From: Salpingoeca rosetta
Taxonomy: Eukaryota > Protista > Choanoflagellata
Direction of reading: 5' to 3'
Assembly (NCBI GenBank): GCA_033442325.1
Contig: JAWQFM010000006.1
Span: forward strand, 2,177,774 to 2,241,773
Length of the DNA: 64,000 nucleotides
Of the stretch, positions 57 to 64,000 are shown piece after piece. Position numbers and translations under genes: made by a program. Numbering within the stretch: the stretch's first letter is position 1; each line of letters opens with the position of its first letter. The notes under the pieces are model-generated. The model saw only the letters and a program-made list of their open reading frames with translations. It was not told the DNA's origin and searched no databases.

Positions 57-710
57 CGCCGCTCGTGCTGTGTTCGACGGCTGCCGACGAATGGGCACTC
101 CTTGACGGTGCGTGTGGCAACCCTGTGTGCAACGCATGTGTCATTGACACGTGGCTCTCCCTCCTGCCCACCTCTCATCTCTCTCACTCTCACACACATA
201 CACTCACACCATCATTCTCCCCCCATCTCCCCTCCCCCCAAACACACACTCCCTCTTCCGCCCATACATCTTTGCAGTGGTGGCTGGTGACCACGTGGCT
301 TCGGTGATTCCGCGTGACTATGCGGCACACACGCTCCAAGTCGTGTGCTCCTTATCTCCACCGCGTCTGTGCCTCCTCACAACCCTCAGCCAGGTATAGC
401 CCCATGTGAACCCGGATGAACCTTAGATGTAAGCATGCACATGCACGCGTGCTTCCTTGTTGATCAAGCGACACGGAACAGCGAACCCGCCGCTCACATT
501 CTCACTGACGCCGTTGTGCTGGTTGATAGGCGGTGTTGCTGTCCCCACAAGGTGTCATTCGCGTGATTTCACTCGCCCAACCGCCAGGCTCCCTCTATTG
601 TGCTTCCACTACCTTCATTCATCAGTCTACCCAGGAGGGCCTGACATGCTTCTCAGCGTCGACAGGGTGCGCGCGCGCGTGTGTGTATGCGTGTGTGCAT
701 GCGTGTGCGT

Positions 711-758
<48 letters not shown>

Positions 759-1689
759 GCGTTCATCCGTGCGGTTAGAAATAATTGCTGTTCCATACAG
801 TCTGCAGCTTGCAACATGCACTGCAACCTCACACGACGCCATGGCTGGCTGCTGCTGTACAGCACTACGTTGATACCAAGCGACACCATCCCTTCAGGAC
901 GCATCCTGTGCACCGGCCACACAGCAAATCTTGAAGCAGGCGTTTGCCTTTACTCACGGGGTCAGTCGGTTCAGCGCAATCAGAAACGCATGTGTCGCCA
1001 CCTCGCACCCAGGCAACCACGCTCTCACATCAACACACACACACACACACACACTCACTCACTCGCACGCTCACACACACACACTCTCTCTCTCTAACCC
1101 CACCCTCCAACCACCCACAGGCTCCATGCAGCCGATGCTGCTTCCGCTGTCCGCGCTGCTGCAGTGTGCAGCTGCACCAGTTTCGGCTGATGGGGAGTCA
1201 CCGCCATCACAGTTCCACGACGCCATCGCCCGAAAACTTGCCGTGGACCAGGACACGCTTTCACGCACGCGCACGCTCAACGCACGCAAGCAACAGCTCC
1301 TGGCGCAGGCATTTGACACGTCGCTGTGTTCGTCGTTGTCAGCTGATGCAGCACCTGCACGCGCATTTGTCCGCACAGCGGCGAGACGGACCGACACCAG
1401 GCCGCAACGAAGACAGCAGCAGTGGCAGGAGGCTCAGCTCGTTACGTGCAACGATGGCGATGTTGTGTCGGAGCGAACAAAGCAAGGCACATGGCGGGTG
1501 GGGGGTGGTGGACAGCGAGTGCATGGTGATGAACGACCGGATTTACTGCACAAGACGCGGACCACACAGGCAAGAAGTGTCATTCAAGTGTGCAAAGAGT
1601 TGAAGCATGGGCGAGTTCGAGGCAGTGCGCTGATAAAACTCTTGCGAGTTGCGCAAGAAGCAAAAGCCCAAGTAAAGGAACAACATTAA
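57..1689 (+). CDS. 3' part of a spliced hypothetical protein gene (5' end upstream of the window)
   Basis: Phase-consistent GT-AG exon chain ~57-107, 278-393, 530-666, 863-960, 1121-1689 (APLVLCSTAADEWALLD/VVAGDHVASVIP.../AVLLSPQGVIRV.../GTTLIPSDTIP.../GSMQPMLLP...KEQH*). No family confidently recognised. Confidence 0.5.
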
Positions 1690-1773
1690 CGGCAAGAACG
1701 ACTTGAACATGAAACAACAAAGTGTGGCACGAAAAGACACACAAGCGAAAACAAAACAACACTCAGAACGCAT

Positions 1774-38869: not shown

Positions 38870-39415
38870 GCCAGCAGTGAGGCACGAATACTGGCCACCA
38901 GAAGGTACATCGTTCCCATGCCGCTTGTGTTTGACCGGGTTAGAGGGCACGCTGATTTGGGTGGTTAGTGATGACTTTTGGTGCCTTTTTGAGTCGGTGG
39001 TTTAAGCAAGCTATTAAGTGGCTGAAGTAAGGCAGATGTAGTGATTGTGTGTATGATCGTGTGTGTGTGTGCGATCGTGTGTGTTTGTGATTGTGTGGTT
39101 CCTCTGCATCAGTACATGGAAGTAAACGCGTTTGAGATGACACAACGTCAGCCAGGCAGTGTGTGTGTGTGTGTGTGTGAAGCAAAGCAACGCTGAAGAC
39201 AAGCAACAAGAGAGCAACAAGAGGGAGGGGAGATGAGCCAACACACGCCGCCACCTCTTCACCCCACGAAGTGGAAGCAAGCATGCCAGCAAGCAAGGAA
39301 GAAGAAGAAGAAGAGGTAAACCGAACCAAGCCAAAGCAACAAGAGAAGGGAGAAGAGGGAAGTGAAGGAGAGACAGCAAGCGCCACAGCAGCCAGCCACA
39401 TGGAGAGAGAGAGAG

Positions 39416-39424
39416 AAAAAAAAA
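39416..39424 (-). terminator. RNA polymerase III oligo-T terminator of the 5S gene
   Basis: T9 run on the - strand ~10 nt after the 5S 3' end. Confidence 0.75.
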
Positions 39425-39433
39425 TGGAAGGGA

Positions 39434-39552
39434 GAGCAACATCACCCGTCATTCCCGCCTGGTCACCCACGGCAGTACTGAACGGGCCCAAACGGGCTTG
39501 GCTTCCGCGATCGGACGAGAGCGGGCGTGATCCCGTTGGTATGAACGTTGCC
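39434..39552 (-). rRNA. 5S rRNA: 5S ribosomal RNA gene
   Basis: Reverse complement GGCAACGTTCATACCAACGGGATCACGCCCGCTCTCGTCCGATCGCGGAAGCCAAGCCCGTTTGGGCCCGTTCAGTACTGCCGTGGGTGACCAGGCGGGAATGACGGGTGATGTTGCTC (~119 nt) has the eukaryotic 5S landmarks CATACC, CTCGTCCGATC, GAAGCCAAGC, AGTACT, GGGTGACC, GGGAAT. All five helices pair. Confidence 0.95.
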
Positions 39553-39574
39553 GACAGCAAAGCAAAACAAGCAA

Positions 39575-39580
39575 TTTATA
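39575..39580 (-). promoter_or_regulatory. TATA box of the 5S gene
   Basis: TATAAA on the - strand at -28 to -23 relative to the 5S 5' end. Confidence 0.65.
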
Positions 39581-39599
39581 AAGGCAGAGCCAGCAAGCA

Positions 39600-40338
39600 G
39601 CAAGCAAGAAGAGGAAGAGGAAAATCCCACACCCACCAAAAAACCAGCAGCAGCAAGCAGAAACGAGCAAACAACCGATTCTGCTTTCCAACCAACCAAC
39701 CAATCCACTTGCCGTTGCTTGCTTCATTCTTCTTCTGCGCAGCAGCTGTGTGTGTGCGTGGTGCTGGTGGTGGGAATGGTGATGGTGATCATGGTCGTCG
39801 TCGCTGCTGACAGGCAGGTGAGATGAGTTGAGGTGAAGTGAGATGAAGGAGAGGTGAGGTGATGTGAGGTGAGGAGGTGGGAACGTGTCATTGGTTCGTG
39901 CACACACACACACACACACACATTGGTGGTTGTGCGTGCCACCTTCCTTCCTTCTCTTCCCTTCCTTTCCTTCGTCGTCCTTCTCGCTGACGCATTCAAA
40001 CACACGCACGCACACGCACACATGTGCAGGGAGGGTGTGCGCACCGTCTCTCTCCCCTTCTCTCCCCTTCCTTCCTTCCATCCATCCTTCCATCGTTGTC
40101 CATTTTCTTCTCCTGTGATGAACCACGCACAACCAACCAGCCAACCAACCAATGACCACATGAATGACCCATCCATCGACAGGTGAGGGTGAGATTGAGT
40201 GCTCGCACTTCTTCCTCCTCCACTCCGTTCTCCTCCTCTTCCCCTTCTTCCCCTTGCACACTGCGCACAACAACAACAACCACCACCACCATCAACAACA
40301 ACACCAACACAGCGCACACTGTCATCGTGCACACACAG

Positions 40339-40388
<50 letters not shown>

Positions 40389-40816
40389 TCACCGTTGTGT
40401 GGTGACAGAACAACTGCCATCAGCCACCGTCATGCAGCGGCCACCTTGAGAATGGATCATGCAGCCTCTTCACCAGTGAGCAGCACACACATGAGAAAGA
40501 GGGGGAAATGACATCAACCAACATCACAGCCAATGTATGTGTGTGTGTGTGCACGGGGTTGCGTTCCTTCTCATCCTCCCCCTTCTTTCTCCTCCTCTCT
40601 GCCTGTGTCTGTGACACACGCTGCTCACTGCTGCTGTTGTTGCTTGCTTGTTTGTGGTGCGTGCAGATGGATGTATTCCATCATCATCATCAGCAGCAGC
40701 AGCAGCAGCAGGTGCTGGCTGATGCGTGAGGCAGTGGGCAACTCCCACCAACCAACCAACAAATGACTACATGCTGACGGATGACAGGTGATCGAACCAC
40801 TGCATCACCCAGACAG

Positions 40817-40855
<39 letters not shown>

Positions 40856-42763
40856 GACGTGTGTGTGTGTGTGTGTGTGTGTCTCGAGGTGCATGTTCTC
40901 TTCTCCACCACCCACACGCCATCATCACCGCCTCCTCATTTTCTTGTGTGTTTGCTCACATCCTTCCCTTCCCACTCTCAACACCACTATCACCTTCCAC
41001 GCTTGTTTCTCCTTCCTTCTGCTGTCGCCGCACAGACGGCCCTTGAATTAGCAGCTGTCACCCCCACCTCCTCCTGCACCAACCACCACTGCTCTGGTGG
41101 GATGAACAGACGGGCGCTGCCATGTGATGACCATCCAGCCACGCTGTATGCGGCTGTGGAAACAGCAACACCAACACACACCACACCACAAACAAGCAAG
41201 CGATGAGCAACGTGAGTGCATCACTGCTCGTGCGCATGCGTGTGTATGCTGCGCACCGCACCAGTGTGCGTGTCTGTGATCGTTGTCTCTGCTGCTCCTG
41301 TCTCCCCTTGTTGTCCCACATCAATGTGCATGCATGTGTGTGGTGCGGCTGCCTGTTTTGCCTTGCTTGATGCGCTGTCTCATTCGTCGTTCTCACACAC
41401 AACTGCTTGCACACCTGCACATTCTCCACCTTGCAGCCGCTGCTTATATTCCCCTCTCTTTCTCGCCCTCCCTCGCGGCCATCACAACAACAGCAGCAGC
41501 AGAGAATGCACCACCACCATCACTAGCTGCTGAACACATCCCCCAGCCAACCAGCCAACCAACCCATCGCCCGCTGCAGCTGCTGGCGGAAGCTGGCTGT
41601 TTGCTGCTGGGAACAGGTGGCGACAGCACAAGTTGCACTTTCGGCGGGAAGCAGCAGCAGCAGCAGAGGTGAGGGCGAGAAGAAGAGGGAAAACGGAGAG
41701 GAGATGTTTGTTGGCTGGTTGGATGGATGGATGAGGTGGGGTGGGGGATGCTGGGTGAGTGTGATGTGGTGTGGTGTGGTGTGGTGTGGCTGGCTGGTGA
41801 CAGAGGATGGTGGTGTGTGGTGGTGGTGTGAGGAAGAGGGATGGAAGGAAGGATGGGGTGCAGCATGTCTTGTTCCCTCCCTTCTGTTTTCAGTTGTCTC
41901 TCTCTTCCCTTTGTTCTTCACACCTGCATGCACAACACCAGCAGTGGCAGTAGCAGTGTGGCTGCGCACATATCCATACTCCCTCTTTCCCTCCCACTCA
42001 CTCACCGTGCTGGGGCTCGCACACAACCACACTTACAGGCGATGCGCACGCACAAGCAGCAGGATGAGGGAAATGTCGAGAAGACTTGCCACGCGTGCCA
42101 GGTGCACTCGCCTCACACATGGTATGTGGGTGGCGATGAGTGGTTGGTAGTGTGATGGAGTGTGGTGATGGGGTGAAGCGAACGAGGGAAGAGGGTTGAT
42201 GGAGAATGATGGTCACGCACCGACACACACACACACACGTACGTACACGTGGTGCGTGTGATGTCAATCCCTCGTTCTGCTGTGCTGACGTTGGCCTGCT
42301 GTCTGCCTGTTTGTGTTCTCTGTTCCCATCCATGGTGCCTGCAACCACACGCACACACACATATGCACAGGTGGTGAGGTGCCAGCACACATCACAATGG
42401 TGATGGAAGCGGGCTAGCATGCCGGCTGCTGCTGCAGCAACTCCCCTGATTCGGCTGCCGCTGCTGTGCTCATGCAGTGTTCCCACATGTGAGCAAGGTG
42501 AGCCCATCATGCATGCTTTGGTTGGCACATGGCGCTTGTGTTGCTGCTCTGGGTGTGCTTGGTGTTGCTGCTGCCGTGCCTCGTGCAGCAGTGTAGCTGT
42601 GCAGCTCACATGCCATGTGTGCTTGTGGCTGCAGGGGCGACTGCCTGAGGATCGTTGGAGGATGATGGGCGGTGCACACATGATAGATTGGGAGGAGCAG
42701 CTGTGGACACACACGTCCATGGTCATGGTGGGCACATCCAACCACAGCGACGCAGTCATGTGC

Positions 42764-42818
<55 letters not shown>

Positions 42819-45800
42819 GTGGGGCGATGAGGAGGAAAGCAGTGGAGGGACAGGAAGGTGAACACGTCTGCTGTGCTCACATGCCATACCTGTGCCTTGT
42901 ATGTGTTGATGTTGTTGTGTCTTGTCGTTGTGTGTTGGTTGCATGCGCACCAGGGCCACATCAGAGGAGGGAAAGGAAGCCGCCATGAACGACACATCGT
43001 CACCATCATCAACCCTTCCCCATTTCTTTCTCCTTTCTCGCTCTTCCACCTCAGCTCCTCTGTCACCGCCATCACCACCGTCACCATCATCGCCATCGAC
43101 TGCATAGCCGACATCACACTCCGGCTGACACCAGCTCCAATCTGGCGTGAGGAACACATTGCACATGTCACTCGCTCTCATGAAGAGGTGAGCAATGTGT
43201 GCGTGTGTGTGTTGTGGTGAGTAGGGACAACATGTGTGCGTGTGGATGTGTGTCAGTGCGGGTGGTTGGATGGGGCTGGCGTGTGGTTGATGATGCTTCG
43301 CTGTCAACCTCACCCCCGCATTCTCCTCTTCGTGCGTCTGTACACACACACGTTTCACAGCGTTGAGGAGGCGCATGAAGCGGTGGAACCAACGACGATG
43401 ACGATGACGAGTGATGCAGGTGAGAGGCCGACTGAGATGTGTATGTGTGTGTTGGTTGACACGCTGTGCTTCCTTCTTCGCCTCCCCTCTTTCCTGGTCT
43501 GTTCTGTCCACTCATGTGTCTTCTCTTCTTCTTCTCCCCTTTTTCGATTGATTTGGACACAGTGCCATGCATCCTGTCTCCGTCCAACCAACCAGCCAAG
43601 CAGCCGAGCGAGCGAGCAAATGGACACGGCGTGGCAAGGGGCCGTTTGTTTTCACCGTTTCCACCACCAGCAGCAACAACAGCTGATGTGTGGCTGTATT
43701 TTGGATGAACTGGCCTTCCGTCTCTTGTCCATCTCCATCTTCTCCCTCGTCGTTGTCGTCATTGGTCACCAACAGCAGCGGCTGCGGCCGTGGATGTGGA
43801 GGTGAGATGAATGGGTGGGGATTGTGGTGGTGATGTGTGATGTGTTGGGTGTGAACAACAGCATGTATGCGGGTGTGATTGTGCGGTGCTGGTTGGATGT
43901 CGTTGGGTCTGTTGGTGATGGCAATGGGGTTTGTCGTCGTTGATATCCCCATTTGTGACAACTCACCTCTTTCTCCACACGCACACACACAGGGTGTGAT
44001 GTGCGTCGATGTGCTGTTGCCTCGCATGACGACGACGATGATGGTGGTGAGTGGTTTGTGGTGGATGTGGACTTGCGCACGCACACGCATGTGCAGATGT
44101 GATGCTTGTGGTGGTGGTGGTGAGGATGTGACATGTGCGTGCACAGGTGATGATGTGGGTGATGTGAATGTAACAAAGGAGGTGGATGTGGTTTGTTTCT
44201 GCCATGCTGGCTCACTGCGTGGTGTGATTCTTGCTGATCCGGTTCTGTGCTTGCGCATGTCTACATGTGTGTGATTTGCACAGGACGATGGCCGTTCTCT
44301 TCCCAAGTCCTCATGACATGAGCAGGGCGATACACGCACACACACAACCGTGCGAGAAAAGAAGGCACAAGGTGAGAGGCTGCCGCTGTGTGTGTGTGTG
44401 TGTGTGGTGATGGGGTGGTAGTACTCATTCACACGCACGTACACGCATGTACACATGCATGCCAACACACCAGAGCAGTCATTGGCTGTGGGGTGGTTGC
44501 ACTGACGTGTGTCACATGAATCAATCTCACAACTCAAATGTGTGTGTGTGTGTGCGTGGCTGCAGGCGGACGTTGTGCGGGTTTCCCCGACCAAATTTCC
44601 TTCCTCCTTTTCCCAACCAATCGCCTTTGCTCTGTGTCATCATCATCATCAGCCTTCCCCATGTGATGTGGAGCTGTTGAGGCATGATCGAGACAGCGGC
44701 CAACACAGGTAATGCAGCAGTGGTGATGTGGTGGATGTGGTGGATGTGGTGGTGTTGTGTGCTGGGTGCTTGTTTCGTTGTTCTTGTGTGTAGGTGATGC
44801 ACCCGCCCACAACATGCTGCATAGTCCCATGCGTGGTCCCTTTGTGTCCCTCCTTTCCTGTCCTCACCATCACCGGTCATTGTTCGTCCCTTGTTGGTTT
44901 CTCCTTGCCTCACAGGCGGGCATGATGCTGCTGCTACTGCTGGTGGCTGCTGTGATGATGGCCGTGCGTGTGCCTGTGCGCTGTGCACCGTGTTTGGGGC
45001 TGCGCCGATGAAGACAAGGAAGGACACGGCCCGTGCCCACCACTCTTCCCCTTTCATCTCCTCTTTCTGCTCCATCAGCGATGACGATGGTGGCCGTGGC
45101 ATGTGATTGCGGTTCCTTTTTCTGGCTTTGCTGTGGCACATCGGCTGGCTGGCTGGCTGCATCAAGCACGGGTGAGGATAATCGTTGATGGTTGGTTGGT
45201 TGGTGGTGGGCTGAGTTGTGGAGTGATGGGAAGCAGGGGAAGGGGGAAGTAACACGGTGGTGCGACGTGGGAGTGCAGAGCGAAAGGAGGGAGAGGGAAG
45301 GGAAGTGATAGGAGGGCGATGATGTTGGTTGGGGGATGGGGGGTGCGTGTGCACATGCACGTGATATCGTGTGGTGGTGGTATCACATGACGAGACACAT
45401 ATCAGTGGCTCATTCCTTTTGCTGGCACCTGTGTGATTGTGATTGTGTGATTGTGGTTGTGATGATGACTGCAGCAGGCAACACACGGCGGTGGATGCCG
45501 GATTGGATTGGCTGGGGTTGACTGGCCATCGTGTCGTGTCGCCCATTTCTCTCCCTCCCCTTGCTCATCTCAACCGGGAACACACACGGCCATGTGTGCA
45601 TGTGTGCGTGTACATGTGTGTGCATCGCCATCAACCACGCCGACAGCGACGCGATGCACGAGGTGAGGGCACGCAATGGTGTGTGTTTGGTGGAAGGGAT
45701 TGAGGGGAAGTGGGAGGAAGGCGTTCATCATGGCCACCATCACCACCACGGCTGTGCACCTGGTCATGTGACCGTGCATTTGGGGGGATGGAGATGAGGG

Positions 45801-48800
45801 GAGAGATGTTGTCGTTGTAATGCTTGTGGTGGTTGTGTTTGCATTGCTGTGCATGGTGCATCGTCTCACTCTGCAATGCCATGTGTGACAGTGTGCGTGT
45901 GTGTGTGTGTGTGACTGCAGATGTGCGTGCGCGTGTGCGCATATGTCAGGCAGATGCGTTGATCGACGACGAGGTGTGTGTGATTGTGGTTGACCTTTGT
46001 GTGCTTGTGCCATCACAACTACGTACAACACCAAGCACATCATCACCGTTTCACCCCAGATGTTGTTGTTGTTCATTCATGCATGACATGCTCACATCCA
46101 CCGCCCTCCCCTTGCTTCTCCTTCTTCCTCTCTTCTGCTGCCACCCCTCCACTGTTTCCCACCACCCCCTTTTCACCCACACACAGAGAGGAACCCATCC
46201 ACATCCAACACCCATGCCCACGCCCACATCCACGCACGCATGCCATGCCATGGCGAGCTGTGCCACCTCAACCAACCCAACTCAACCCAGGCCGAGGAAA
46301 GGAAGAGGGGAAGCAAGGACAGAAGACGTTATGCTCCCAACAGATGTGTGTGTGTGCATGTTGATGGACGGTGTTCTCCCCCCCCCCTCCATCGCCTCGC
46401 CTCTTGCTTCCATGACGATCTGGCTGGGTGGCTGTTGCCCCCCTCCCCTTGTTTATGTTCTCTTCCAGCCTTTTGTGGCTGTTCGTTGTCTGTTGTGACT
46501 GTGAGGAGCGGAGGAGAAAGCGAAAAAGAGAAGAAGAGGGGGAGGAGAGGAGAGGAGAGGGGGTACATGCTGTCCACAACTCTGTGTGTGTGTGCGTGTG
46601 TGTTTGGCTGTTTCTTCTTTTCCAATCCCCCCTTCTCCCTTCCCTCCTCAGCCTGCAAGGCCTGTGAGCCTGCGTTGCATTCACACACACAGTGCTGTTC
46701 CCCCTTCTTCTCCTCCCTCTCCTTCTTCTGCACGCAAGTCCGCCCTTCAACAAGCAAACGCAGAAAGCAAACAGCAGTTGCCGCACAAACGCAGCAGTGG
46801 GCGATTATTTGTGGCATCTTCCACAAATCGCCCAAACACGAACCAACAAGACCAACACAACAAACAAGCGACAGGCGACACGCGAATCAAGGTGCGTGCA
46901 TGTGTGTGCTTGAGTGGGAGGTGGTGGCTTGCGTTGTTCGTGTGCGTGGCTGGCGCAGGGTTGGTGGAGAGGAGGGTGAGCGTGCGCGTTGTGACGGGCA
47001 CTCACTGGCGGTCCTGTTGTGGGTGATCTCGTTTGGTTCCATGGACTGTGTGGGGTGTGGTGGGTGATGGTGTGATGGTGAACAGTTGCAAGCAGAGAAC
47101 ACGCACAGCAGCGACCACACCATGGATGTGTGCAGGGCCAAAGGCATGCAAGGCGTTGCCCACGGTCAGTGAGGCTGACATATGTGCTGCACAGGCCCAT
47201 GCCACGCTGGCACCGTGAGTTTGGGTGAGTTCTGTCAATTGGTTTGACTGCTGTGTGGGTGCGTGTGATTGTGTATGTGAAGGAGGGAGAGTGGGACGTG
47301 GCTGTGGTGGGTGTTGTGACCTCACACGCTCTCCTGCTGCTGTGGATGCATTTGGCTCACACGCACAGACACACACACACACAGAGGGATGATGGGCTGC
47401 ATCGACCCACACACATGAGTGTGTGAACACACACGCACACACGCACACGCTGACAGGCAGTCTGATGCCACCTCACGGTGCGTTGCACTTGCATGTGTAC
47501 ATGACTGTGACTGTGTGCATGTCGTTCATGCTGTGTCTGCTTGTGATTCACACTGTGTGTGTGTGTGGTGGCTGCTTGCTTCCCTCTGTCTCACACACAT
47601 GTGTATGTGTTTGGATGGTGACACACACGCACACAGACAGACAGTGAGTGGGTGTGCAGACACACATGCCCACACAGCAAGGCAGGGCATACTCTTCCTC
47701 CTCTCCTCTCCCTCTCTCCCTCTCCTGCCACCACCGCTGGTGCATGGAAGGACCAGTGGATGCAAGGCGTGTTGGATGACGCTGGGCTGGCTGATGTCTT
47801 TCCCTTGGTGTGTGTGTGTGTGTGTTTGCAGCACTGCTGCTCTTGTTTCCCGCTGTTTGTGTCTGTTGTGTTTGTTGTGCGTTGCTGCTTCCTGTGTGTG
47901 TGTGTGTGTGTGTGTGTGTTCACCACAGCCACGTCGTGTGCGCCCATCACCATCGTCTGTGCTCACACACCTCCCATGTCTCCCTTTCTTCTTCTGCTCC
48001 CTTCCCTCGCTTCCCTCTTTGTCATATCCCCACACGCACATGCACATGCACACATGGACGCTTGTGCAGGGGAAAGTGCAGGCTGTTTGTTGGAACACAT
48101 GGCAAGGCACGCGCAACCAAGCAAGGACACACGAGCAAGCATGGACACAGGACAAGCAAGCAAGGCGTGGGGCTGCCATAGACCACGCACCCCGTTGGAG
48201 AAGGAGGGGAGCGTGAGCGCGTGGTGTTGATTGTGTATGCGTTGTGTTATTGTGTTCTGTTGTTGTTGACAGCGTGCACGTCTCTCTCCCCTGTATCCTT
48301 CCTCCCCTCCCTTTCTCTCCGTTCTCTCTGTTCTCTCTTGCCACAGTATGCACACTGCTGTTGCTGCTGCTGCTGTTGTTGTTGTTGGCTGAAGGTGATG
48401 ATGGCGGTTGATGGGGGAGTGAAGCGGTGTGGCGCAGCATGGAGCTGTCGCTTGTTGTGTGTGTTGTGTGTGTGTGTGTTGCTTGCAGTTGATATGGGGA
48501 TGCTTTCTCGCTTGTTCTTACCACCTGTGTGTGTGTTTGCTTGCTGTCGTGTTGTTGAAGTGAAGTGGAAATATACAATGCAACACGCATGTGCAGCTGT
48601 GTGTATCGTGTGATGCTGCTGGTGGTCGATGGTTGCGGTGAAGTAAACACAGTGTGTGTTGTTGTGATGTGACTTGGGTTAGTGGCGAGCTGGGCGTGTG
48701 GCTGTGTAGTGGGTGTTGCATGCAGGTGAGGACAGCAGCAGCAGCAGTGAACGAGGGAGTGGGGGCAAGGATGAAGCGAGTGAGTGATGATGGCAGCGAC

Positions 48801-49700
48801 TGGTGGTGGATGTGAACAGGGCTGATGTAGAAGAAGGCGACAGTGTGGGCTTGATGGGTTTATGATGTGTTGTAACACATGCAGCATGAAACATGAACGA
48901 GGCAGGAAAGGAAGGGAAGGCAGGCTCAAGGGAAGGAGTGGCGGCACAAAGTAGTGAACAGGGACAAGGGAAGGCATGCAAGCACATGGAAACAATAGCA
49001 GCAGTGGCAAGAATTGAAACAAGACAGGAGGAGGGGTGCGGTGACAAACAAGGCTTGTGGTGACAAGGTGGTGACAGAAGGGGATGAAGGGAAGCACAAA
49101 TACGCACAGTGGGTCGTGTTGTGGTGCTGTGTTGTGCTGTGTGAAGTGAAGGATGAGTGATGTTGTGTGGGGAGGTGCTGTGTGGCGGTGAATGGATGGA
49201 AGAGAAGGAGAGACAAGGGCGAATGAAGCATGTGGCAACAAGTGCAAAGCAACAATGCAACACATGGAATGTGGAACAGCGAAGGGAAGAGAGAAAGGCG
49301 CAAACGTGAGTGAAGGGTGGGACAAAGGGACAAAGCGGCACATGCATGGATGTGTTGTGCCGTGTTGTGTTGTGATTGTGGAGATGGAGCAATGGAAGTA
49401 GAAGCACGAACATTGCAAGCAGTAGCAAGCATGCACGAAGAGAGAAGGTAAAGTGGGAAGAGGAGAAGGCGATTGCAGCGAGCTTCTTACACATCCGATC
49501 ATATCGCTGGGGCGAGGGAGGAAGCGCAGGTGATGTTAGAGAGTGAATCCGAGAAGCGAGGCGATGCTGTTGGGTGAAGTGGAGTGAAGTGAAGTGAAGT
49601 CGAGAGGGTGACAGAGCGGTGGGTGAGTGATGGTGTGGATTGAGAAAGGGTCGATTGCAGATGCGTGCAGGCATGGTGGGTGATGCTGTGGCACAGTGGC
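39600..49700. other. About 10-kb low-complexity non-coding spacer
   Basis: No exon-like high-complexity segments. Dominated by GTG/CAC/GT/GA simple sequence. Intergenic gaps elsewhere in the window are only 0.3-0.9 kb. Confidence 0.65.
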
Positions 49701-50020
49701 GAGTGAGTAGACTGAGGAGCGTTGTGGAGTGAACAAGGTGGATGCAAGGGAAGTTGTGGGTGCTTGCAAGCAACACGCACAGAGCAAGCAAGCGTACACA
49801 CGAAGTGTCTGCAGTGAGTAGACGAGGGTGAATCCAATGGGAGTAGGGAATGTTGTGAGTGCTTGCGAGTGAGTAGACGGATGTGGTGGAGTGAATCCAA
49901 TGCAAGCAGGAGATGTTGTGAGTGCTTGCAGACGGATGTGGTGGAGTGAATCCCATGCAAGCAGGAGATGTTGTGAGCAGAGGATCGTTTTGCAGTGAAT
50001 CCTATGCAAGTAGAAGAACC
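49700..50020. repeat. Degenerate tandem subrepeats (50-65-nt unit, core GTGAATCCxATGCAAGxAGGAGATGTTGTGAGTGCTTGC)
   Basis: Core starts at 49828, 49891, 49946 and 49995, with weaker copies at 49729 and 49543. Confidence 0.85.
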
Positions 50021-50823
50021 TACCAATGTTTGCGAGCAACGCAGCAGCACTGTGCAATCGCATGCAAGTGTGTTTGCAGTGAGCAGAGGATTGCTACTCA
50101 TCCAATCCACTGAAACACGTTCCCGTGCCTGCAGGTAACAGCTACACACAAACGCATGCACACACACACGTGTACACGTGTCCTTTGCGCTGCTCCTCGT
50201 CGTTCTCTGCGTGATTGCTTGTCGCTTGTGCAATCACATGGAAACGAATCCGTCCTCGCTGCTCTACTCCTCAGTTCCTCTGCTTTGCTCCTTCTTACTT
50301 CAGCGCAGCGTGCCTGCAGGCAAGTAGAAGTGCGCACAGCGCGGTGTGCTCGCGTGCACGTGTGCCTGCAAGCCAGCCACGTGGTCTTGTGCGTGTTGCG
50401 GCAGCTCATGGCATGGTGCAGTGACGTTTGCTCGCTTGCTCATTTGATCATCGGAGTAGGGAGACTGGGGCGGTGAAGTCAAAAAGGGGGTGCAGAAAAA
50501 GTGCGATCATGTGATGAAAAAAGGCTGAAAACTGTCATGAGTAGTGTCTGAACACTGTGTCGCGATGCACCAGTGCAGCTGCAGCTGATGCAGCGTACGC
50601 GAAGCAAATTGCATGCATGCATGCAAGCATTGGTTGGTCACGGGCCAGGGGATTTTGGGGTGTGAGCAATGTGAAGAATCTTGATGCAGTGAAGCTGTGC
50701 GCACTCGCTAGATCCAGTCACAAATCTAGATCTAGCAGATTCACTGAATCTAGATTGCGGTGCCTGCAGGCAAAGTGCACGAGGACAAAGCAGCGATTCA
50801 AACAGCTGCCGCTCGATGGATTG

Positions 50824-51347
50824 GCATACATGAGAGGAAGGATGCAAATGAGCAAGACAAAAAAAAAAGGAAAAGAGAAGGCAAAGGCAAAGAGCCGCTG
50901 AGTAGAGGCGCAAGCATGAGAGCAAGGCGATTGTCGCTGAGCAGGATTGCTTGCGGGCACGAAAAGCCGCGTCTGCGCCCTTGCATACAACTTCTCTTTC
51001 TTCTTGGGTCTTTGTTCTCCTGTGTTCTGAGCGACCTCTCTCTTCATGTGTGTGTGTGTAGTGTGTAGTGTGTGAGTGCAGGCAGAGCGAAGCGACACTC
51101 TTATGTGTGTTGTGAGCAATGCTTGCACGAGCACGCATGCATGCACGGCACATGCAATGAGAACAGCACGGGCGTGTGTCTGTGTGTGGATGCTTGTGTG
51201 TGTAGTGTGATGCGTGAGCGATGTGTGTGGGTGTGATGAGGCACATGCGGGGAGGCGAGCAAGCGATTGTTCGTGTCTCTGTGTGTGTTCTTGTGATCAC
51301 TCGCATCATGAGCAAACGCATCTCCACTACACAGAAGCAAAAGCAAC
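50824..51347 (+). ncRNA. Highly structured non-coding RNA segment, candidate pre-rRNA 5' external transcribed spacer
   Basis: Three long stem-loops with many G-U pairs that form only on the + strand: 50824-51053, 51076-51128 and 51192-51338. The last is capped by GCGAGCAA-GCGA-TTGTTCGT (GNRA tetraloop). The segment ends AAAAGCAAC at the gap. Confidence 0.5.
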
Positions 51348-51447
51348 NNNNNNNNNNNNNNNNNNNNNNNNNNNNNNNNNNNNNNNNNNNNNNNNNNNNN
51401 NNNNNNNNNNNNNNNNNNNNNNNNNNNNNNNNNNNNNNNNNNNNNNN
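51348..51447. other. Assembly gap (100 N, true size unknown)
   Basis: Run of 100 n. Confidence 0.99.
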
Positions 51448-54400
51448 CAGACTACGTCGTGTCAAAGGACGTGGATTCGTTCGATGGGCAAGTGCCTGCC
51501 ATCTTCGTTCCTTCCAAGCCACCCTCCCTTTCCCCAATCGCCCTTGTCAACATTAATTTGGTGAACATGCTTCTGGGCAAGATGTTTCTTCGTCTTCCTC
51601 CTCTCCTGTCAAGCCCATCGGCTGCACACGGCGCTGCGCGCCGTGCCTGGCTCGAAACAGACATCCTCGAGGAAGAGGAGCTTGTTCGTGCGCTGCAACC
51701 CACGTCCGTTCTATATCGTCCAACCAGCAACTTGGCCTCGGGCGTGCTCCTTCAGCGTGAGCTGTTTTGTGGCTGGATGCTTCCGGGAACTCCAGATTGC
51801 CCTGCCTTTGTGCATGATGAGGTGCTGGCGTTTGCAGAGAGGACAGTTTCCCACACGCAGTGCAGCGACAAGCTCACTGTTGTGCCCGGGTCGTTGCTAG
51901 CCCGCGTGACGGTCGACTTGTACGCGACAGGCACCGACGTCTACGTTCGCAGCTTTCGTGCACAGACGACAGCGGCTGTGTCTTGCTCTGCGGTGACCTC
52001 AGGACCTTCCGCACTGGCCGTATCCCTTACCGTGACGTCTCCAAACATGCTCGACAGCCTCTGGCCTCACGATTTCTTCTCCAACATCCACTTGGCAACC
52101 CTCCCCCTACAGCTCGTTCAGGCCTTGAAAACGCACATCTCTGGAACTGTTCGTGGAACGCTTGGCTTGGGCACCGACGTGTCATCAACGCCGCCATCCG
52201 TGACCACGTTTCTCGATGGAGACGTGTTTGAGACATTTGAGATGCGTGGCACGCCACTCTCTGATGTCCTGTTCACGTCTGTGTCGGAAGCCGTCACGTT
52301 TCTGCAGCCAGTTGTGGACAAGCTGCACCAGGAGTTGCAAACGCACATTCCAGCCATCGATGCTGCTGTGGCCGAGGTCCTACCGCCACCACACCTGTCA
52401 GCCCTCGTCACAGCCTTTATGAAGGATGCCCTACATCCCACGGCTCTGAACTTCTGGCTGTGGTTCAAGCATCAGCGGCCGGAAGGATCTGTCCTGGTCG
52501 AAATTCTGACTTCAGGCAGGAGTAAGCGCGCGACCTCCGTATCCGGCGCTCCGGCCGAGGTTGCCCTGGGTGTCAGGCTTGGTCACGCAGGTGTTGGCGT
52601 CCCGGGTACAGCGGCAGCGCTGCAGCCGATTCTGGCCGCCGTTAACAGCGTCATCCAGGCGCTTCCATCGTCAGCGGCAGGATGCCTCCGCATTGACACA
52701 TGGTCCCCGAAGCCACTGCAAGTGAGCGATATCGAGGGCGCGAGCCTAGACTACATGGTGCGTGCTCGCACATTGTTTCCAGTGGCTCCCATCAGCAACA
52801 GCACGACTGTGGACAGCGAAGTTGCCGTCGCAGGCGCATGCTCGCTGAGTGGAATGTTGGGCTTGAAGGATGCAATCATTGGCGGTGTCGGCATGCTGGC
52901 TACATATGACCTGGCGTCTCAGACCGTTGCCTTGCACTTTAACACGACGCACGACTTGGCCGACGCGCAGCTGCTGTCTGTGCCCCCATCAACTCCCGAC
53001 AGTTTGCAGAAGCAGAGGTGTCTCAGCGCATTCCAACCGTTTTTTTGGCCCCGCCCCAGTGCCGCAGATGCCGTCAATGATGCGCTCAAGCAGGCGGTGG
53101 CAAGCATCGACACATTCCCTCTAACACTCACTCGCTGGCCCATCGTCCCCATCACCGGAGACGTGGTTGCGCGTCTTCGCGCAGCCCTGAACACTTACGA
53201 CGATGATCCTCCTGAGATCTTCCTTCCTGCCCTCGAAAATGCCATTGCGGGTGCGTCACACCCCTCGCAAGGACACTTCGTTTCTGCTTCGGCCACTGCA
53301 GCCCAAGAAGACCCTGGCGCGTGTGACATTTGGGTGCAATTGTCCACAACGCACAACATATCTGTGACGAACCATCAGTCCCCGTGGAAGTGGCTACTGG
53401 ACGCCAACAGGCTTTCGGCTGAACTAACGCTTGTGGGCAGCTTCCACATCCGTCTTCAGGACGGGTCGGCTAGTTTGGTTTCGTTTCACCTCGGCGGCAC
53501 CTCAAAGAGGCACAATTTCGTGCTGCCCTCACTCTTGTCCATGCAATCAGGCATCCCTTTGTCTTCTTCATTCGTTGCGGACGTCAATTTGCCTGATAGC
53601 ATACGCACTGAGCTCAAACTAAAGGTGCACACCACCTGGGGTGCAACGCCGGAGTTCGTCATTGGTGCCACCCATACCAGCTCAGAGAAGTCCTCCGGCA
53701 CAACAACGTTCCATATTCGCGACAACCCTGTGGAGCAGGCAGTGAGCCCGAGCAACGTCCTCACGGTCCTGAAGAACGGGTTGCTCAACATGATTCCGAG
53801 GGCCCTCTCAGGCTCTCTCAAGTTCAAGGTGTACCCTTACCAACACACCCTTGACGAGGTTGGTGACCTCGAGCACATCATCAAAGATGCGGCGTCTCTG
53901 CTCACCATCCCCAGTGACCCAAACCCCTCGTTGGCAACCTCGCCTTCCTGCCTTGCTGTCATGGAAAAGGAGCCACCTGTGACGCTCAACGTCGTGCTGT
54001 TCGACTCTCACAACAAACCGACGCCCTGCAAGCTCTCACCTCTCGACTACACCAGCTGGAAGACCTTCGAATCATCCTTCAACGCTGCGTTACAGCAGTG
54101 CGGGCTTTCACATTGGCTCAAGTTCGATGTGCTTCAAGACACAATTGGCGCCACCCACACAGGCGGGAAGCCTTGTGCAACGTGGGAGCTTCGTCCTGCA
54201 GTTCCAGGTGCTCTCACTTTTGTGTCCGTGAACTCCACACCAGCAAGGCAGAACCTGACCGTGCAAACCACGCAGAACGCGGCCAAGATACCCTTGTTTG
54301 GGCTCTATGAAGATTTTGTCGCCATTGTCCATGGCATCTTCATGCAGCAATTGCCCCGCCCCAAACTGAACACCTTGACCATTCCTGCCAAGGATGCGGG

Positions 54401-54905
54401 CATTCCTGAGGAGTTTGCAGCGGTGTACCCTGCGGAGCTGACCGCCGTGGGGTTCAAGTTCTTCACCGCGTACAACAAGAGCGTCACGACGACCACCCCA
54501 ATCGACGACAGCATTTCGGCGGCGCATGGACTGTTGAAAGCTTTTGTGCGCAACGGCAGCGCGTCTGCCGCCATCGAGGCCAGCATCAGCGCTGCCCTTG
54601 CATTTGCGTTTGACTGCCCCCCTCCCAAGCAAGGCTTGAACGTGACGGTGTGGTCGTCGCTCAACAGCTCGCAGACAATTGACAAGGTGACAGTGCCAGC
54701 AACACCGAAAAACACGTTGCAGGTCATCGTCGGCGGACAGCTCCGCTCTCCACCATCTCCTGTTGTTTCCAGCTCGGCACAAAACTCCAGCATTGTCGTC
54801 AAGCGCGTTCAACAGACATTTCTGGTGATCACGGTTCTTACGCCGGCCGTATCGTTTCGGGGTACGTGGGGTCAATGCAAAATCTTAGAGAGCTGGGCAA
54901 TGTAG
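51448..54905 (+). CDS. N-terminal visible part (~1,150 codons) of a giant extracellular protein; start lies in the gap
   Basis: Frame +3 is open from the gap edge (DYVVSKDVD...) to 54905. No introns or microsatellites. Many N-glycosylation sequons (NST, NTT, NIS, NLT, NKS, NVT) and scattered Cys. Confidence 0.85.
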
Positions 54906-54912
54906 TTAATAA

Positions 54913-57900
54913 AACTTCCTTCCAATGGAGGTCCATATAATAATACGTGTGGTCAACGACACAAGCATCGCACTTCCTCTGGCCAAGCCCATGATCAGTG
55001 AGGTTGATTTGCACGCAGAGGCGCATTTTGAGGCTGGTGCACAAGAAGTCGAAGCTGACGTGTCCATCATCGACGTCAAGGCCAGAGACATTAAAGGCAG
55101 CACAGACGTAACGATCGACATCGCGCTGCTTCCACCACCGACATCCGCCCACAGCGACGCGTTTTCGCATGAGGCTCAGCAGGCAGGCGCTCCGTGTTCG
55201 TCTGCTACTCTTTCGCATGAGCTTGCGCGCAGCGACGTGTTGCACCAGCCTGCAGCGCGCAGCCCCTGTCCACACCAACCTGGACAGCTGCACTACTCCG
55301 ACCTTTCAACCATTAATCACGCTCTGCGGCAGCCTGATTCGTTCTACTCTTTCTTCGTGGCCACGGTCGACCTGAACACGCACTTTCAGCTGGAGAACAT
55401 CTCCATTGGCGTCGATCATCTTGCGGTGGTGACGACAGGCGCTGGTATTGATCTCACGATGAAGGACAACTTCACCCTTCATGCTGGCTTCAACGTGCAT
55501 GACATGGTCAACCAATTTAAATTTCACCTCGCGTTCCATGGGAAGGAGAGCTTTGTCAGGGCGATGAACCAAGCCTTGTCCATCAACTCATCGAGTTTGT
55601 GCTGGTTTGCTGAGCAGCTACTCGAGCCTTCAAAGTCAGTCCATCGGAGCCAAGTCGGTGTCCACCCTCTGCCTTTTGCGAGCAAGGCCATTAAGGACTG
55701 GCTTGGGCCATACACTGATGCCGCTGAGAAGGCAGTTGAAGCTGTGTGCAATGGGGGTGCGCGAGCCGATATTGCTGTGCTTTGCGAGGTGCTGCAAGAG
55801 TCCTTCGGGCACCCAGTGTGCACGCACAGCGCCCTTCACGAGGATAAACTTGTGCTCCGCATCCAAGTTGACTTGGTCAACTCTTCAGCCAGGGACTCAT
55901 TCAAGTATGACTCCGTGCTGTTTGAGCCTGTGAAAGACAAGCCGGAGTTGTCCATTGGCGAATCAGCGTCTGGGACCCTTGTGTCAGCCGCCTCCGTTGT
56001 TGGTACCGCCACACTCGTCATCGATCTTTCTGGCACCGTGCCGATCCCCTCTGTCCGCAGCGCCAACTTGACAATGGCTGTCTCGGTCAATGGCCAAGGC
56101 ACCATCAAGGTCTGGTTTGGGCCTATGCCTGTGCCTTTCTCTGATGTGCAGTTGAAGATTGGCGACCCCGTCACTCTGAGCATTGAGTTTGGAGAAGATG
56201 CCGGTAGCGATGCGTCGTTCAGCCTACCTTCGCAACCATCGCCGACTTCGTCCGCATCTGAGACTGCGCTGAGTTCCACAACCTCAGGAACGCCAGTGGG
56301 CGCTGGGATCACGCTCCACGGCAAAGCTTCTCTGACAGCCAAGGTGAACATCCCCTTCACTCACCCCTGCCACCTTGATGTGGAGATTCCCAAGATTGCA
56401 GCGTTTCTTCTGGACCCGTCTTCTGACACGTTCCACTTCAGTACTCCGGGCTGTCCAGATGGTCTGTTGAGCAGTCTCTTGCGCGCTCTGCCCCAATTTG
56501 GATTCCAGCATGCATTGCAAGACTTTGGGCGATTGGTTGCTCAGTGGGAGCGTGAGTGGGAGGAGTTCCTTCGCTCAAAGCTTGGGCTAGGCGGCTTGCT
56601 GGACGGACTTCACATTCCGTTGCTTGACGGCAAGTGGTGGACGCACCACCTCCACGTCCATCTCGGCGACATCTTTGGGCCTGGCTTCTTCAAACGCCTT
56701 CTTGCATTCCTTCAGCCAAAGCTCCAAAGCCTAAACCTGAGCGGTATCGGGGCCAAGATTAAGGACATTGAAGAGAAGGTGCTGCACTGGTTCACAGAGG
56801 CAATTCACCTCCTCCTTCATCCGTGGCTGATACACTGGCCCAAGGTCCCGGACGTGGCTGACAAAACGTACAAGTGGAACCTCGACCTGCACGGAACGCT
56901 GAAACAAAAGCCCGATAAGCTTGCGTTTGACCTCGGCTCTCACGGCATCGCCAACCTCGACTTCAACTGTGAAGAGGAAGCCCAGTTTTACTGGCATGTG
57001 AACGTCACCGTGACCTGGTCACCGCAAAAGGGTATTCGCTTCCTGTTCAACGGCAACCCAGCGCTGGAGCTAAAACTTGAGCTGGACGTTCCAAAGTGCG
57101 ATCTCATTGGCAGCTTCTTGATTGCTGGCATCGACATTGGGGCAAACGCACTTGCCAAGGCGGAGATTGTTGTGACGCCGCCAAAGTTCAGCAAAACTCA
57201 CGCTTGGGACTTTGAGTTGGACGCTGATGGCAAGCTTGAAGGTGACGCCATCCTTGGTTTTGCGGGAATTTTCGACCAGCTACTCCACAAGGACACGCAG
57301 GACACAATTCAAGCGCTACCAAACTTCCACTCCCACCTAAATTGCAGCTTCCAATGCTCGATCAAGGGCTGCAGTAACGCACCGCGCTGCCATTTTGGCC
57401 GCCCGCGTTTGTGTGTGGGGCAGCTGTTGACGTATTTGCTGCACAACACCCTGAGTTTCACCAGGGCACAATACTTCCAGAACGTGGAGAGGGTAGTCGA
57501 CTTTCTCGAGCAGAAAGTTGACCTCTCGCCTGTCTTACCGCCCCAAGCCCTCATAGACTTGCTGCACCAGGTTGCTGACGCGTTTTGCCATGGCAAGTGT
57601 GATTTTGATGGAGTGTTTGAAACCGTCGAAAAAGTTGCCGCCGTCTTGAAGCTGATCGAGCGCTTACAAGCGCTTGCGGAGCACTTGGCTGACCCCACAT
57701 GTTCGAAGACCACCCACGAGATGCAGGAGTTCATCCTCGACTTTAGCAAGCCCGACCTGGCGCCAGAGCCACATGGCCCATCGTACCCGCCCAACCAGCT
57801 GAACACAAACGGCCTTGCCGCGGAGCACGCAAAGTCGGTGCAGGAGATTTGGAACAGCATCACCGTGGAAGGCTCGTTCAACGTCAAGCTTTTGTTCTTG

Positions 57901-63900: not shown

Positions 63901-63918
63901 GATGTTAAAGGCGTCGAT

Positions 63919-63999
<81 letters not shown>

Positions 64000-64000
64000 C
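54913..64000 (+). CDS. Giant membrane protein, C-terminal part (>3,000 codons, open to the window end): large ectodomain with degenerate RTX-like motifs, ~9 TM segments, polyQ tail
   Basis: Frame +1 reads open from 54913 to 64000 (first ATG 54925). The ORF track lists no frame +1 ORF here, as expected if there is no stop. Motifs CIGGQGNNTFVV, LDLLDGDDVFEL, VSAGAGLDAFKL. Hydrophobic segments from ~62914 to 63837. Tail RHDYAPL...DQQQQ. Confidence 0.9.
63919..64000 (+). repeat. (CAG)9(CAA)n polyglutamine tract running off the window
   Basis: In-frame Gln codons after the last TM segment. Confidence 0.95.

What the first reader, a model, noticed from the sequence alone, without database searches (positions are those of the whole stretch)
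39416..51447. Possible rDNA array border with a linked 5S gene: 5S(-), 10-kb spacer, subrepeats, structured ETS-like RNA, gap
Seen, in order: an intact 5S gene on the - strand, an 11-kb gene-free stretch in an otherwise compact window, tandem subrepeats, a palindrome cluster, and a folded + strand segment ending exactly at a gap with ...AAAAGCAAC. Established: many eukaryotic 18S rRNAs begin AACCTGGTTGATCC or TACCTGGTTGATCC, rDNA spacers carry subrepeats upstream of the Pol I promoter, budding yeast has 5S in the spacer transcribed opposite to the 35S unit, and rDNA arrays collapse into gaps. Inference: this is the first unit of an rDNA array with yeast-like 5S linkage in a probable holozoan protist, and the final AAC may be the first bases of 18S.
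Basis: partly seen in the sequence, partly recalled or inferred. Interest (0 to 1): 0.75.

Follow-up and report, generated by a model that had tools for sequence, protein, structure and literature searches.

The report
Chromosome-end 5S and rDNA spacer module
This stretch is one of at least 40 copies of a chromosome-end block in a choanoflagellate (very probably Salpingoeca rosetta), with a 5S rRNA gene facing inward, about 10.5 kb of non-coding spacer, and the start of an rRNA unit facing the telomere; the assembly gap cuts it about 1.6 kb before the 18S gene.

Summary

The rDNA-border idea holds. Window 39092-51347 is colinear, at 80-96% identity, with the 5S-to-18S interval of five other scaffold ends that do run into 18S. 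The mid-spacer has at least 40 copies in the assembly, almost all at scaffold ends and with fixed polarity.

Two details fail:
- The final AAC is not the start of 18S. In the copies on C25, C23 and C3 the same ...AAGCAAC continues as transcribed-spacer-like sequence for another 1.57-1.59 kb.
- A long tandem array is not shown. On two other ends a single, broken unit is capped by TTAGGG repeats.

The two sides of the gap are not continuous. The right side is a single-copy internal fragment of a giant open reading frame, and it runs to the end of the scaffold.

The nearest published parallel is the subtelomeric rDNA plus 5S layout of Aurantiochytrium limacinum. This scan had already noted subtelomeric rDNA on other pieces of this genome. 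I rate it a new member of a known kind, of moderate interest.

The parts
39092..39433 (-). Centromere-side edge of the shared chromosome-end block. It is the 3' flank of the 5S gene and holds the Pol III terminator (9 T on the minus strand, 39416-39424).
   Evidence: Alignments to 20 other 5S loci start at 39092-39162. All 20 copies have a T run of about 8 or more. At least 35 other ends carry a further shared element beyond this point that the window lacks.
39434..39552 (-). 5S rRNA gene, transcribed toward the chromosome interior. It differs from the genome's main 5S sequence by two substitutions.
   Evidence: RF00001, 94.9 bits, model 1-120. Comparison with 19 other copies. By my reading of the alignment, both substitutions fall at unpaired model positions.
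39573..39582 (-). Conserved TATA-like box (TTTATAAATT, TATAAA at -28 to -23) upstream of the 5S gene.
   Evidence: All 20 copies have [GTC]ATAAAT at the same place.
39583..49706 (.). Non-coding spacer, rich in microsatellites, with a purine-rich tract (62-70% purine) at about 48.5-50.0 kb.
   Evidence: 80-92% identical and colinear with C25, C23, C19, C9 and C3. At least 40 copies in the assembly. No Pfam hit, no codon periodicity, and frame-breaking indels. 29 TG/CA microsatellites and the purine profile are.
49707..50026 (+). Tandem subrepeats (48-63 nt units with core GTGAATCC) just upstream of the conserved promoter-like region. Inferred to be enhancer-type spacer repeats.
   Evidence: TRF and the repeat finder. 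Copy number ranges from 2.8 to 6.9 among paralogs.
50100..51347 (+). Most conserved part of the block. Inferred to hold the Pol I promoter and the start of the 5' external transcribed spacer. It holds GTGCCTGCAGG(C/T)AA motifs at 50125, 50310 and 50760 and a palindrome at 50708-50753, and it folds strongly as RNA.
   Evidence: 88-96% identity to five paralogs, against 80-92% in most spacer bins. Six-way alignment with long invariant runs. Motif count is 5 against 0.27 expected. Fold z-score is -6.56. At least 28 long copies in the genome. The transcription start is not mapped.
51348..51447 (.). Assembly gap of 100 N, the smallest gap size seen in this assembly. It marks a discontinuity, not a short missing piece.
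   Evidence: Gaps in this assembly range from 100 to 3057 N. In at least five other copies a gap lies between the point matching 51295 and the 18S start. The left side matches rDNA paralogs and the right side does not.
51448..64000 (+). Unrelated terminal contig. It is an internal fragment of a giant single-copy open reading frame that is open into the gap and off the scaffold end.
   Evidence: Stop-free at 51450-54902 (1151 codons) and 54913-63999 (3029 codons). Single copy in the genome. The scaffold ends at 64000. The first stop-free stretch has no Pfam or Atlas match. No microsatellites.

Best explanation
Window 39092-51347 is the inner two-thirds of a repeated chromosome-end module of a choanoflagellate genome, very probably Salpingoeca rosetta.

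The module reads, from the centromere side outward:
- a 5S rRNA gene, transcribed by Pol III toward the chromosome interior, with its own TATA-like box and T-run terminator;
- about 10 kb of fast-evolving non-coding spacer;
- a variable set of 55-63 nt subrepeats;
- a strongly conserved region of about 1.2 kb, inferred to hold the Pol I promoter and the start of the 5' external transcribed spacer;
- in the paralogs, about 1.6 kb more spacer and then 18S-5.8S-28S, transcribed toward the telomere.

Shown: the homology, copy number, polarity, position at the scaffold end, the 5S signals, and the absence of coding signal.

Inferred: the promoter and enhancer roles, that this copy also continues into rRNA genes, and that the 12.5 kb contig after the gap was attached here by scaffolding rather than being the true neighbour. 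The gap therefore hides at least the rest of the transcribed spacer. The ending AAC is an accident of where the contig broke.
For: - 5S: 94.9 bits over the full model, with conserved upstream box and terminator.
- Homology: full-length colinear matches to the 5S-to-18S interval on C25, C23, C19, C9 and C3. 18S, 5.8S and 28S follow on those.
- Break point: window 51347 maps 1,571-1,586 nt upstream of the 18S start.
- 5S placement: 29 of 30 5S hits follow one rule, plus strand near low scaffold ends and minus strand near high ends.
- Copy number: at least 40 copies of the mid-spacer and at least 28 of the promoter-like region, with the same end-relative polarity.
- Scaffold end: C6 ends at window 64000.
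- Telomeres: TTAGGG repeats cap truncated units on C23 and C17.
- Conservation gradient: 5S is identical in 17 of 20 copies, 18S is 96.7-99.1% identical, the promoter-like region 88-96%, and the spacer 80-92%.
- Right of the gap: single copy and entirely one giant open frame.
- Literature: Fairclough 2013 reports shared subtelomeric repeats at most S. rosetta telomeres.
Against: - No 18S, 5.8S or 28S is present in the window, so whether this copy is complete cannot be shown.
- The assembler or scaffolder did place the giant-ORF contig next to it, with the minimum gap size.
- The window 5S has two private substitutions, one at a conserved loop base.
- This copy lacks the extra shared element found centromere-side of the 5S at 35 or more other ends, so it is an atypical, shortened copy.
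- The RNA structure has no covariation support.
- The Pol I start site is not mapped.
Confidence: 0.8

Rival explanations
1. Truncated relic. On this chromosome the module was broken inside the transcribed spacer and is physically joined to the giant gene. There are then no rRNA genes at this locus, and the scaffold end is not a chromosome end.
For: The assembly joins the two with a minimum-size gap. This copy is already shortened on its other side. Its 5S has two private substitutions. Broken units exist elsewhere in the genome. On C3, 18S is also followed by a gap and then sequence unrelated to rDNA.
Against: The right-hand contig is an internal gene fragment open at both ends, so it cannot start at the junction. 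The break falls in a zone where at least five other copies also have assembly gaps. Conservation of 50.1-51.3 kb is as high as in copies that have 18S. The 5S-to-scaffold-end distance of 24.5 kb fits the terminal pattern. Scaffolds in this assembly contain other end-to-end joins.
Confidence: 0.15
2. The gap starts exactly at 18S (AAC being its first bases) and hides a long collapsed tandem rDNA array of which this is the first unit, with the 5S linked as in yeast.
For: 18S here does begin TAAC. rDNA often collapses in assemblies. Some ends seem to carry two spacer copies about 35 kb apart, for example the low end of C17.
Against: Three paralogs continue past the same ...AAGCAAC with 1.57-1.59 kb of non-18S sequence. 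On C23 and C17 a single truncated unit is capped by the telomere. The 28S 3' flanks do not re-enter this spacer within 1-1.5 kb.
Confidence: 0.04

Closest known systems
Universal subtelomeric rRNA genes of the thraustochytrid Aurantiochytrium limacinum (bioRxiv 10.1101/2023.06.15.545109)
   Same: An 18S-28S cluster transcribed toward the telomere sits at nearly all chromosome ends. A 5S gene transcribed away from the telomere lies about 10 kb further in (13.3-13.7 kb here). The repeated spacers are shared between all ends.
   Different: The organism belongs to a different supergroup (a stramenopile, not a holozoan). Its telomere repeat is TTAGG, not TTAGGG. Its spacers are long 366-529 bp tandem repeats (LORE-TEARS), while here there are only 55-63 nt subrepeats and microsatellites. 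There the rDNA lies about 9 kb from the telomere; here several units are broken and capped directly.
Encephalitozoon cuniculi, one rDNA unit at each of 22 chromosome ends (PMC4704409)
   Same: There are single rRNA units next to telomeres on all chromosomes rather than one tandem nucleolar organiser.
   Different: It is a tiny parasite genome. [quoted passage not shown]
Linked (L-type) 5S-35S/45S arrangement, as in budding yeast, some plants, turtles and notothenioid fish (PMC3692318, PMC8789306, PMC10138776)
   Same: The 5S gene lies in the spacer upstream of the Pol I unit, on the opposite strand.
   Different: In those cases the 5S sits inside every unit of a long tandem array. Here it is 13.3-13.7 kb from 18S, on the inner side of a terminal block, and tandem repetition is not shown.
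Shared subtelomeric repeats of Salpingoeca rosetta (Fairclough et al. 2013, PMC4054682, Table S3)
   Same: This is probably the same sequence block: regions repeated on most telomeric supercontigs, which the authors used to telomeric ends.
   Different: The main text does not mention rDNA, rRNA or ribosomal genes, and the term hits in the supplementary files that were shown were gene-annotation entries. The content of the repeats was not described.

Membership tests
5S rRNA gene (Rfam RF00001) | Covariance-model score above the gathering threshold (38 bits) over the full length | tested here: met
   94.9 bits, model 1-120, not truncated
5S rRNA gene (Rfam RF00001) | Pol III terminator (T run) just downstream and conserved upstream element | tested here: met
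   T9 starts 9 nt after the 3' end and TATAAA lies at -28 to -23. Both are conserved in 20 of 20 copies.
5S rRNA gene (Rfam RF00001) | Expression and incorporation into ribosomes | not testable with these tools
   No RNA data. The window copy has two private substitutions relative to the sequence shared by 17 of 20 copies.
Linked (L-type) 5S-rDNA unit | 5S and 18S-5.8S-28S lie on one repeated unit | tested here: inconclusive
   Met on the paralogs C25, C23, C9 and C19, where 5S lies 13.3-13.7 kb upstream of 18S. In the window the rRNA genes would lie in or beyond the gap.
Linked (L-type) 5S-rDNA unit | The unit is repeated head to tail in a long array | tested here: not met
   On C23 and C17 one truncated unit is capped by TTAGGG repeats. 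The 28S 3' flanks on C3 and C8 do not match the spacer or the element next to the 5S. Collapsed arrays cannot be excluded from an assembly.
Universal subtelomeric rDNA architecture (Aurantiochytrium type) | rRNA unit near most chromosome ends, transcribed toward the telomere | tested here: met
   Most of the 18S hits lie at scaffold ends pointing outward. At least 28 promoter-region copies and at least 40 spacer copies have end-relative polarity.
Universal subtelomeric rDNA architecture (Aurantiochytrium type) | 5S gene further in, transcribed away from the telomere | tested here: met
   29 of 30 5S hits follow the rule, including the window copy.
Universal subtelomeric rDNA architecture (Aurantiochytrium type) | Long tandem spacer repeats (366-529 bp units) between the elements | tested here: not met
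   Only 55-63 nt subrepeats and microsatellites are found.
   Three paralogs align through ...AAGCAAC and continue for 1,571-1,586 nt before TAACTGGTYGATCC.
Pol I promoter / 5' external transcribed spacer | Mapped transcription start and precursor RNA | not testable with these tools
   Only indirect support: this is the highest conservation in the block, the subrepeats lie just upstream, and there is a plus-strand folding excess.

The most novel reading that the evidence does not exclude
Salpingoeca rosetta, a close unicellular relative of animals, may have no conventional nucleolar organiser. All its Pol I rRNA units and all its 5S genes would then sit in one shared module on most of its roughly 70 chromosome ends. 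This is the design described as novel in the unrelated protist Aurantiochytrium. It would tie nucleolus formation to telomere clustering, which Micro-C data report genome-wide in S. rosetta (PMC12221973). It would also explain the unusual 1-3% divergence between 18S copies as weak homogenisation between non-homologous ends.
Probability: 0.35. Interest if true: 0.65.

Novelty: new member of a known kind. Interest (0 to 1): 0.45.

Why it matters
For this window, the result shows what the 12 kb 'empty' stretch is. It also shows that the gap is a true discontinuity and that the contig after it should not be read as the neighbour of the rDNA.

For the genome, it gives content to the 'shared subtelomeric repeats' reported in 2013: they are 5S genes, rDNA spacers and rRNA units.

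If the module is the only home of rRNA genes, choanoflagellates join a short list of organisms whose ribosomal genes are spread over all chromosome ends (microsporidia, nucleomorphs, a thraustochytrid). That bears on how nucleoli, telomere clusters and concerted evolution work in the closest relatives of animals. It also matters in practice for scaffolding this model organism's genome from contact maps, because clustered, near-identical ends invite false end-to-end joins.

Tried and rejected
C6 beyond the window, C7, C4, C35 and C36 could not be read directly. The C6 length was obtained instead from the missing right flank of a search locus.
- A five-way MAFFT alignment of the 14 kb intervals timed out. 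It was replaced by chained pairwise BLAST.
- The first stop-free stretch after the gap has no Pfam family and no Atlas hit. I ran no further search on it, because it is outside the finding.
- Coding potential of the spacer was rejected.
- There are no canonical G-quadruplex motifs in the spacer.
- Covariation support for the ETS-like RNA was not found: 0 compensatory pairs, and 19 variant pair types kept against 17 broken. I did not send the typed 552-character structure to the count of structure pairs; I recomputed it in a script instead.
- I looked for signs of tandem arrangement. The 28S 3' flanks and the element beside the 5S are unrelated.
- Literature searches for choanoflagellate rDNA, 5S or subtelomere organisation found nothing specific. 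Two broad searches were uninformative.
- The idea that the genome is Aurantiochytrium was rejected: its telomere repeat is TTAGG, while here it is TTAGGG.
Full report
WHAT IS THERE

Rfam finds one RNA gene in the 64 kb window: a full-length 5S rRNA at 39434-39552 on the minus strand (94.9 bits). There are no tRNAs.

Read on the minus strand, the 5S gene is preceded by TTTATAAATT, with TATAAA at -28 to -23. A run of nine T follows nine bases after its 3' end. The finding's start coordinate, 39416, is the first base of that run.

From 39.6 to 49.7 kb the sequence is rich in microsatellites and low-complexity tracts. TRF and the repeat finder show 48-63 nt subrepeats at 49707-50026. Further on there are three copies of the self-complementary motif GTGCCTGCAGGCA (5 strand-wise matches against 0.27 expected) and a palindrome at 50708-50753.

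The last kilobase before the gap folds far better than shuffles. The z-score is -6.56 on the plus strand and -4.84 on the minus strand, against -1.36 for a spacer control.

THE GAP, TESTED FIRST

The left side (to 51347) belongs to a repeat family that elsewhere continues into 18S. The right side (51448-64000) matches nothing but itself in the genome and has no similarity to any rDNA locus.

On the plus strand the right side is stop-free from 51450 to 54902 and from 54913 to 63999. It is therefore an internal piece of a giant gene, open into the gap and off the end. A search with the last kilobase returned a locus with no right flank, so scaffold C6 ends at window base 64000.

Gaps in this assembly range from 100 to 3057 N, so 100 is a floor value, not a measurement. 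The two sides are not continuous and cannot be in frame.

The two stop-free stretches were handled apart, and only the first was searched, by reference.

WHAT THE LEFT SIDE IS

The window's assembly is 55.4 Mb in 68 pieces.
- At least 30 5S genes were scored. Of these, 29 follow one rule: plus strand within 4-60 kb of a low scaffold end, minus strand near a high end.
- 18S genes lie outside the 5S genes and mostly point outward.
- Window 39092-51347 aligns colinearly over its whole length with the 5S-to-18S interval on C25, C23, C19, C9 and C3.
- Substitution identity is 80-92% in most spacer bins and 88-96% in 50.15-51.35 kb.
- On those paralogs Rfam finds 18S, 5.8S and 28S downstream.
- The mid-spacer (44000-46500) has at least 40 copies, and the promoter-like segment (50150-51347) has at least 28 long copies. 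Nearly all are near scaffold ends, with polarity fixed relative to the end.
- TTAGGG repeats cap a unit on C23 about 250 nt into 28S. On C17, by coordinates, they cap a unit about 1.4 kb into 18S.

THE AAC

Window 51347 corresponds to these positions on the paralogs:
- C25:1066558, where 18S starts at 1068145
- C23:7793, where 18S starts at 6221 on the minus strand
- C3:1865276, where 18S starts at 1866861

That leaves 1,571-1,586 nt still to go. All three copies read ...AGAAGCAAAGCAAC at this point and then continue ACACGACATATGCG.... 18S here begins TAACTGGTYGATCCTGCCAG. The AAC is a coincidence of where the contig broke.

In at least five other copies an assembly gap falls in the same 1.6 kb zone. 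On C9 it starts at the position matching 51295, and on C3 it starts 193 bp later. This zone breaks repeatedly in the assembly.

IS THE SPACER REALLY GENE-FREE?

The ten longest ORFs have no Pfam match. Against five paralogs, their substitutions are spread evenly over the three codon positions, and 60-100% of indels are not multiples of three. The spacer is non-coding.

THE 5S COPY

Seventeen of 20 copies share one identical 119-nt sequence, although their flanks differ by 10-20%. This argues that the genes are kept functional.

The window copy has two private changes. By my reading of the alignment, one is at model position 54 (a conserved loop U changed to C) and the other at position 103 (an unpaired base). 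It passes the model easily, but its function is not assured. Its closest relative is the C14 copy, which is 95.8% identical over 1.2 kb.

HOW IT LIKELY WORKS

Shown: two rRNA transcription units face away from each other across a rapidly diverging spacer at the chromosome end. Conservation rises in the order spacer, promoter-like region, 18S, 5S.

Inferred:
- The variable 55-63 nt subrepeats act like the enhancer repeats of other rDNA spacers.
- Pol I starts somewhere in 50.1-50.4 kb, near the invariant GCGTGCCTGCAGGCAAGTAGAAG. That would give a 5' external spacer of about 2.6 kb.
- The plus-strand fold reflects that precursor RNA. The consensus fold is -175 kcal/mol on the plus strand and -116 on the minus strand.

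Variation among six copies gives no compensatory pairs, so the structure is only a thermodynamic prediction.

ARRAY OR SINGLE UNIT

The evidence favours single, often broken, terminal units (C23, C17). The 28S 3' flanks on C3 and C8 resemble each other but not the window spacer.

A further shared element lies centromere-side of the 5S at 35 or more ends. The window, whose homology stops at 39092, lacks it. This element is not found next to 28S either. A few ends seem to hold two spacer copies about 35 kb apart, so short arrays cannot be excluded.

ORGANISM AND ASSEMBLY

Several points match the S. rosetta tables of Fairclough et al. 2013:
- the genome size;
- the TTAGGG telomere repeat;
- gaps of estimated, variable length, as in a paired-end draft (the 2013 paper describes an Arachne hybrid Sanger/454 assembly);
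- two scaffold sizes that match at kilobase resolution: C8 ends at 2,024,178, against supercontig 7 at 2,024 kb, and the C17 telomere lies at 1,385 kb, against supercontig 18 at 1,385 kb with TTAGGG assembled at its 3' end.

C1 exceeds 3.14 Mb, which is larger than any 2013 supercontig. C3 contains two rDNA ends head to head. The assembly is therefore probably a later re-scaffolding. Kim et al. 2025 re-scaffolded S. rosetta with Micro-C and report genome-wide telomere clustering. Attachment of a 12.5 kb stray contig to a chromosome end fits that history (inference).

COMPARISON WITH WHAT IS KNOWN

The 2013 paper noted shared subtelomeric repeats but did not mention rDNA. I found no paper describing choanoflagellate rDNA or 5S organisation.

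The same layout was described as a novel configuration in Aurantiochytrium limacinum: the 18S-28S cluster faces the telomere, and a 5S gene lies about 10 kb further in, facing away. Encephalitozoon has one rDNA unit per chromosome end, but its 5S genes are not subtelomeric.

Earlier notes of this scan had already recorded telomere-capped rDNA units and 5S-18S linkage on other pieces of this genome. I re-derived these points independently here.

VERDICT

The 18S-start and array details are wrong or unproven. This is a new member of a known kind, of moderate interest.

Noticed in passing
window 51448-64000 (+): A giant open frame of at least 4,180 codons, nearly intron-free, broken only at 54903-54912. 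It is single copy, its first 1,148 codons have no Pfam or Atlas match, and it has no TG/CA microsatellites, against 113 in the rest of the window. It is cut by both the gap and the scaffold end.
   Followed up: partly
L001-L008 (18S copies on C23, C25, C30, C35, C36, C3, C9, C4): 18S paralogs differ by 0.9-3.3% from each other, which is unusually high variation within one genome. The C9 copy is 3,272 nt long, with about 1.18 kb extra that is partly an internal duplication.
   Followed up: partly
G000:C3:1866861-1886690 (L043, L045): 18S on the plus strand is followed after a gap by non-rDNA sequence, and then by a complete 28S on the minus strand 13 kb away. Two chromosome ends seem to be joined head to head inside one scaffold. 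Internal telomere repeats also occur on C1, C7 and C12.
   Followed up: partly
L010:2000-3119 and at least 35 other scaffold ends: A shared element of at least 1.1 kb lies just centromere-side of the 5S gene and has internal inverted repeats of about 100 nt. It is absent from the window copy and from seven other of the 20 loci compared.
   Followed up: partly
L045:1-1500 and L047:5873-6846: The 28S 3' flanks on C3 and C8 are 86.7% alike, G+T rich, and have subrepeats of about 115 nt. This is probably the 3' external or distal spacer. The flank on C30 is unrelated and starts with (CA)n.
   Followed up: no
G000:C24:6497-20605: This is the one 5S hit that breaks the orientation rule. It is a diverged copy (67 bits) lying on the telomere side of an rDNA unit and on the same strand.
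   Followed up: no
window 48500-50000: A 1.5 kb tract that is 62-70% purine on the plus strand (GC skew up to 0.52) lies directly upstream of the subrepeats. It has no canonical G-quadruplex motifs.
   Followed up: partly
L017 (G000:C14:2413-5531): The 5S-proximal 1.2 kb of the C14 end is 95.8% identical to the window copy, against 78-85% for the other ends. This points to a recent exchange between these two chromosome ends.
   Followed up: no
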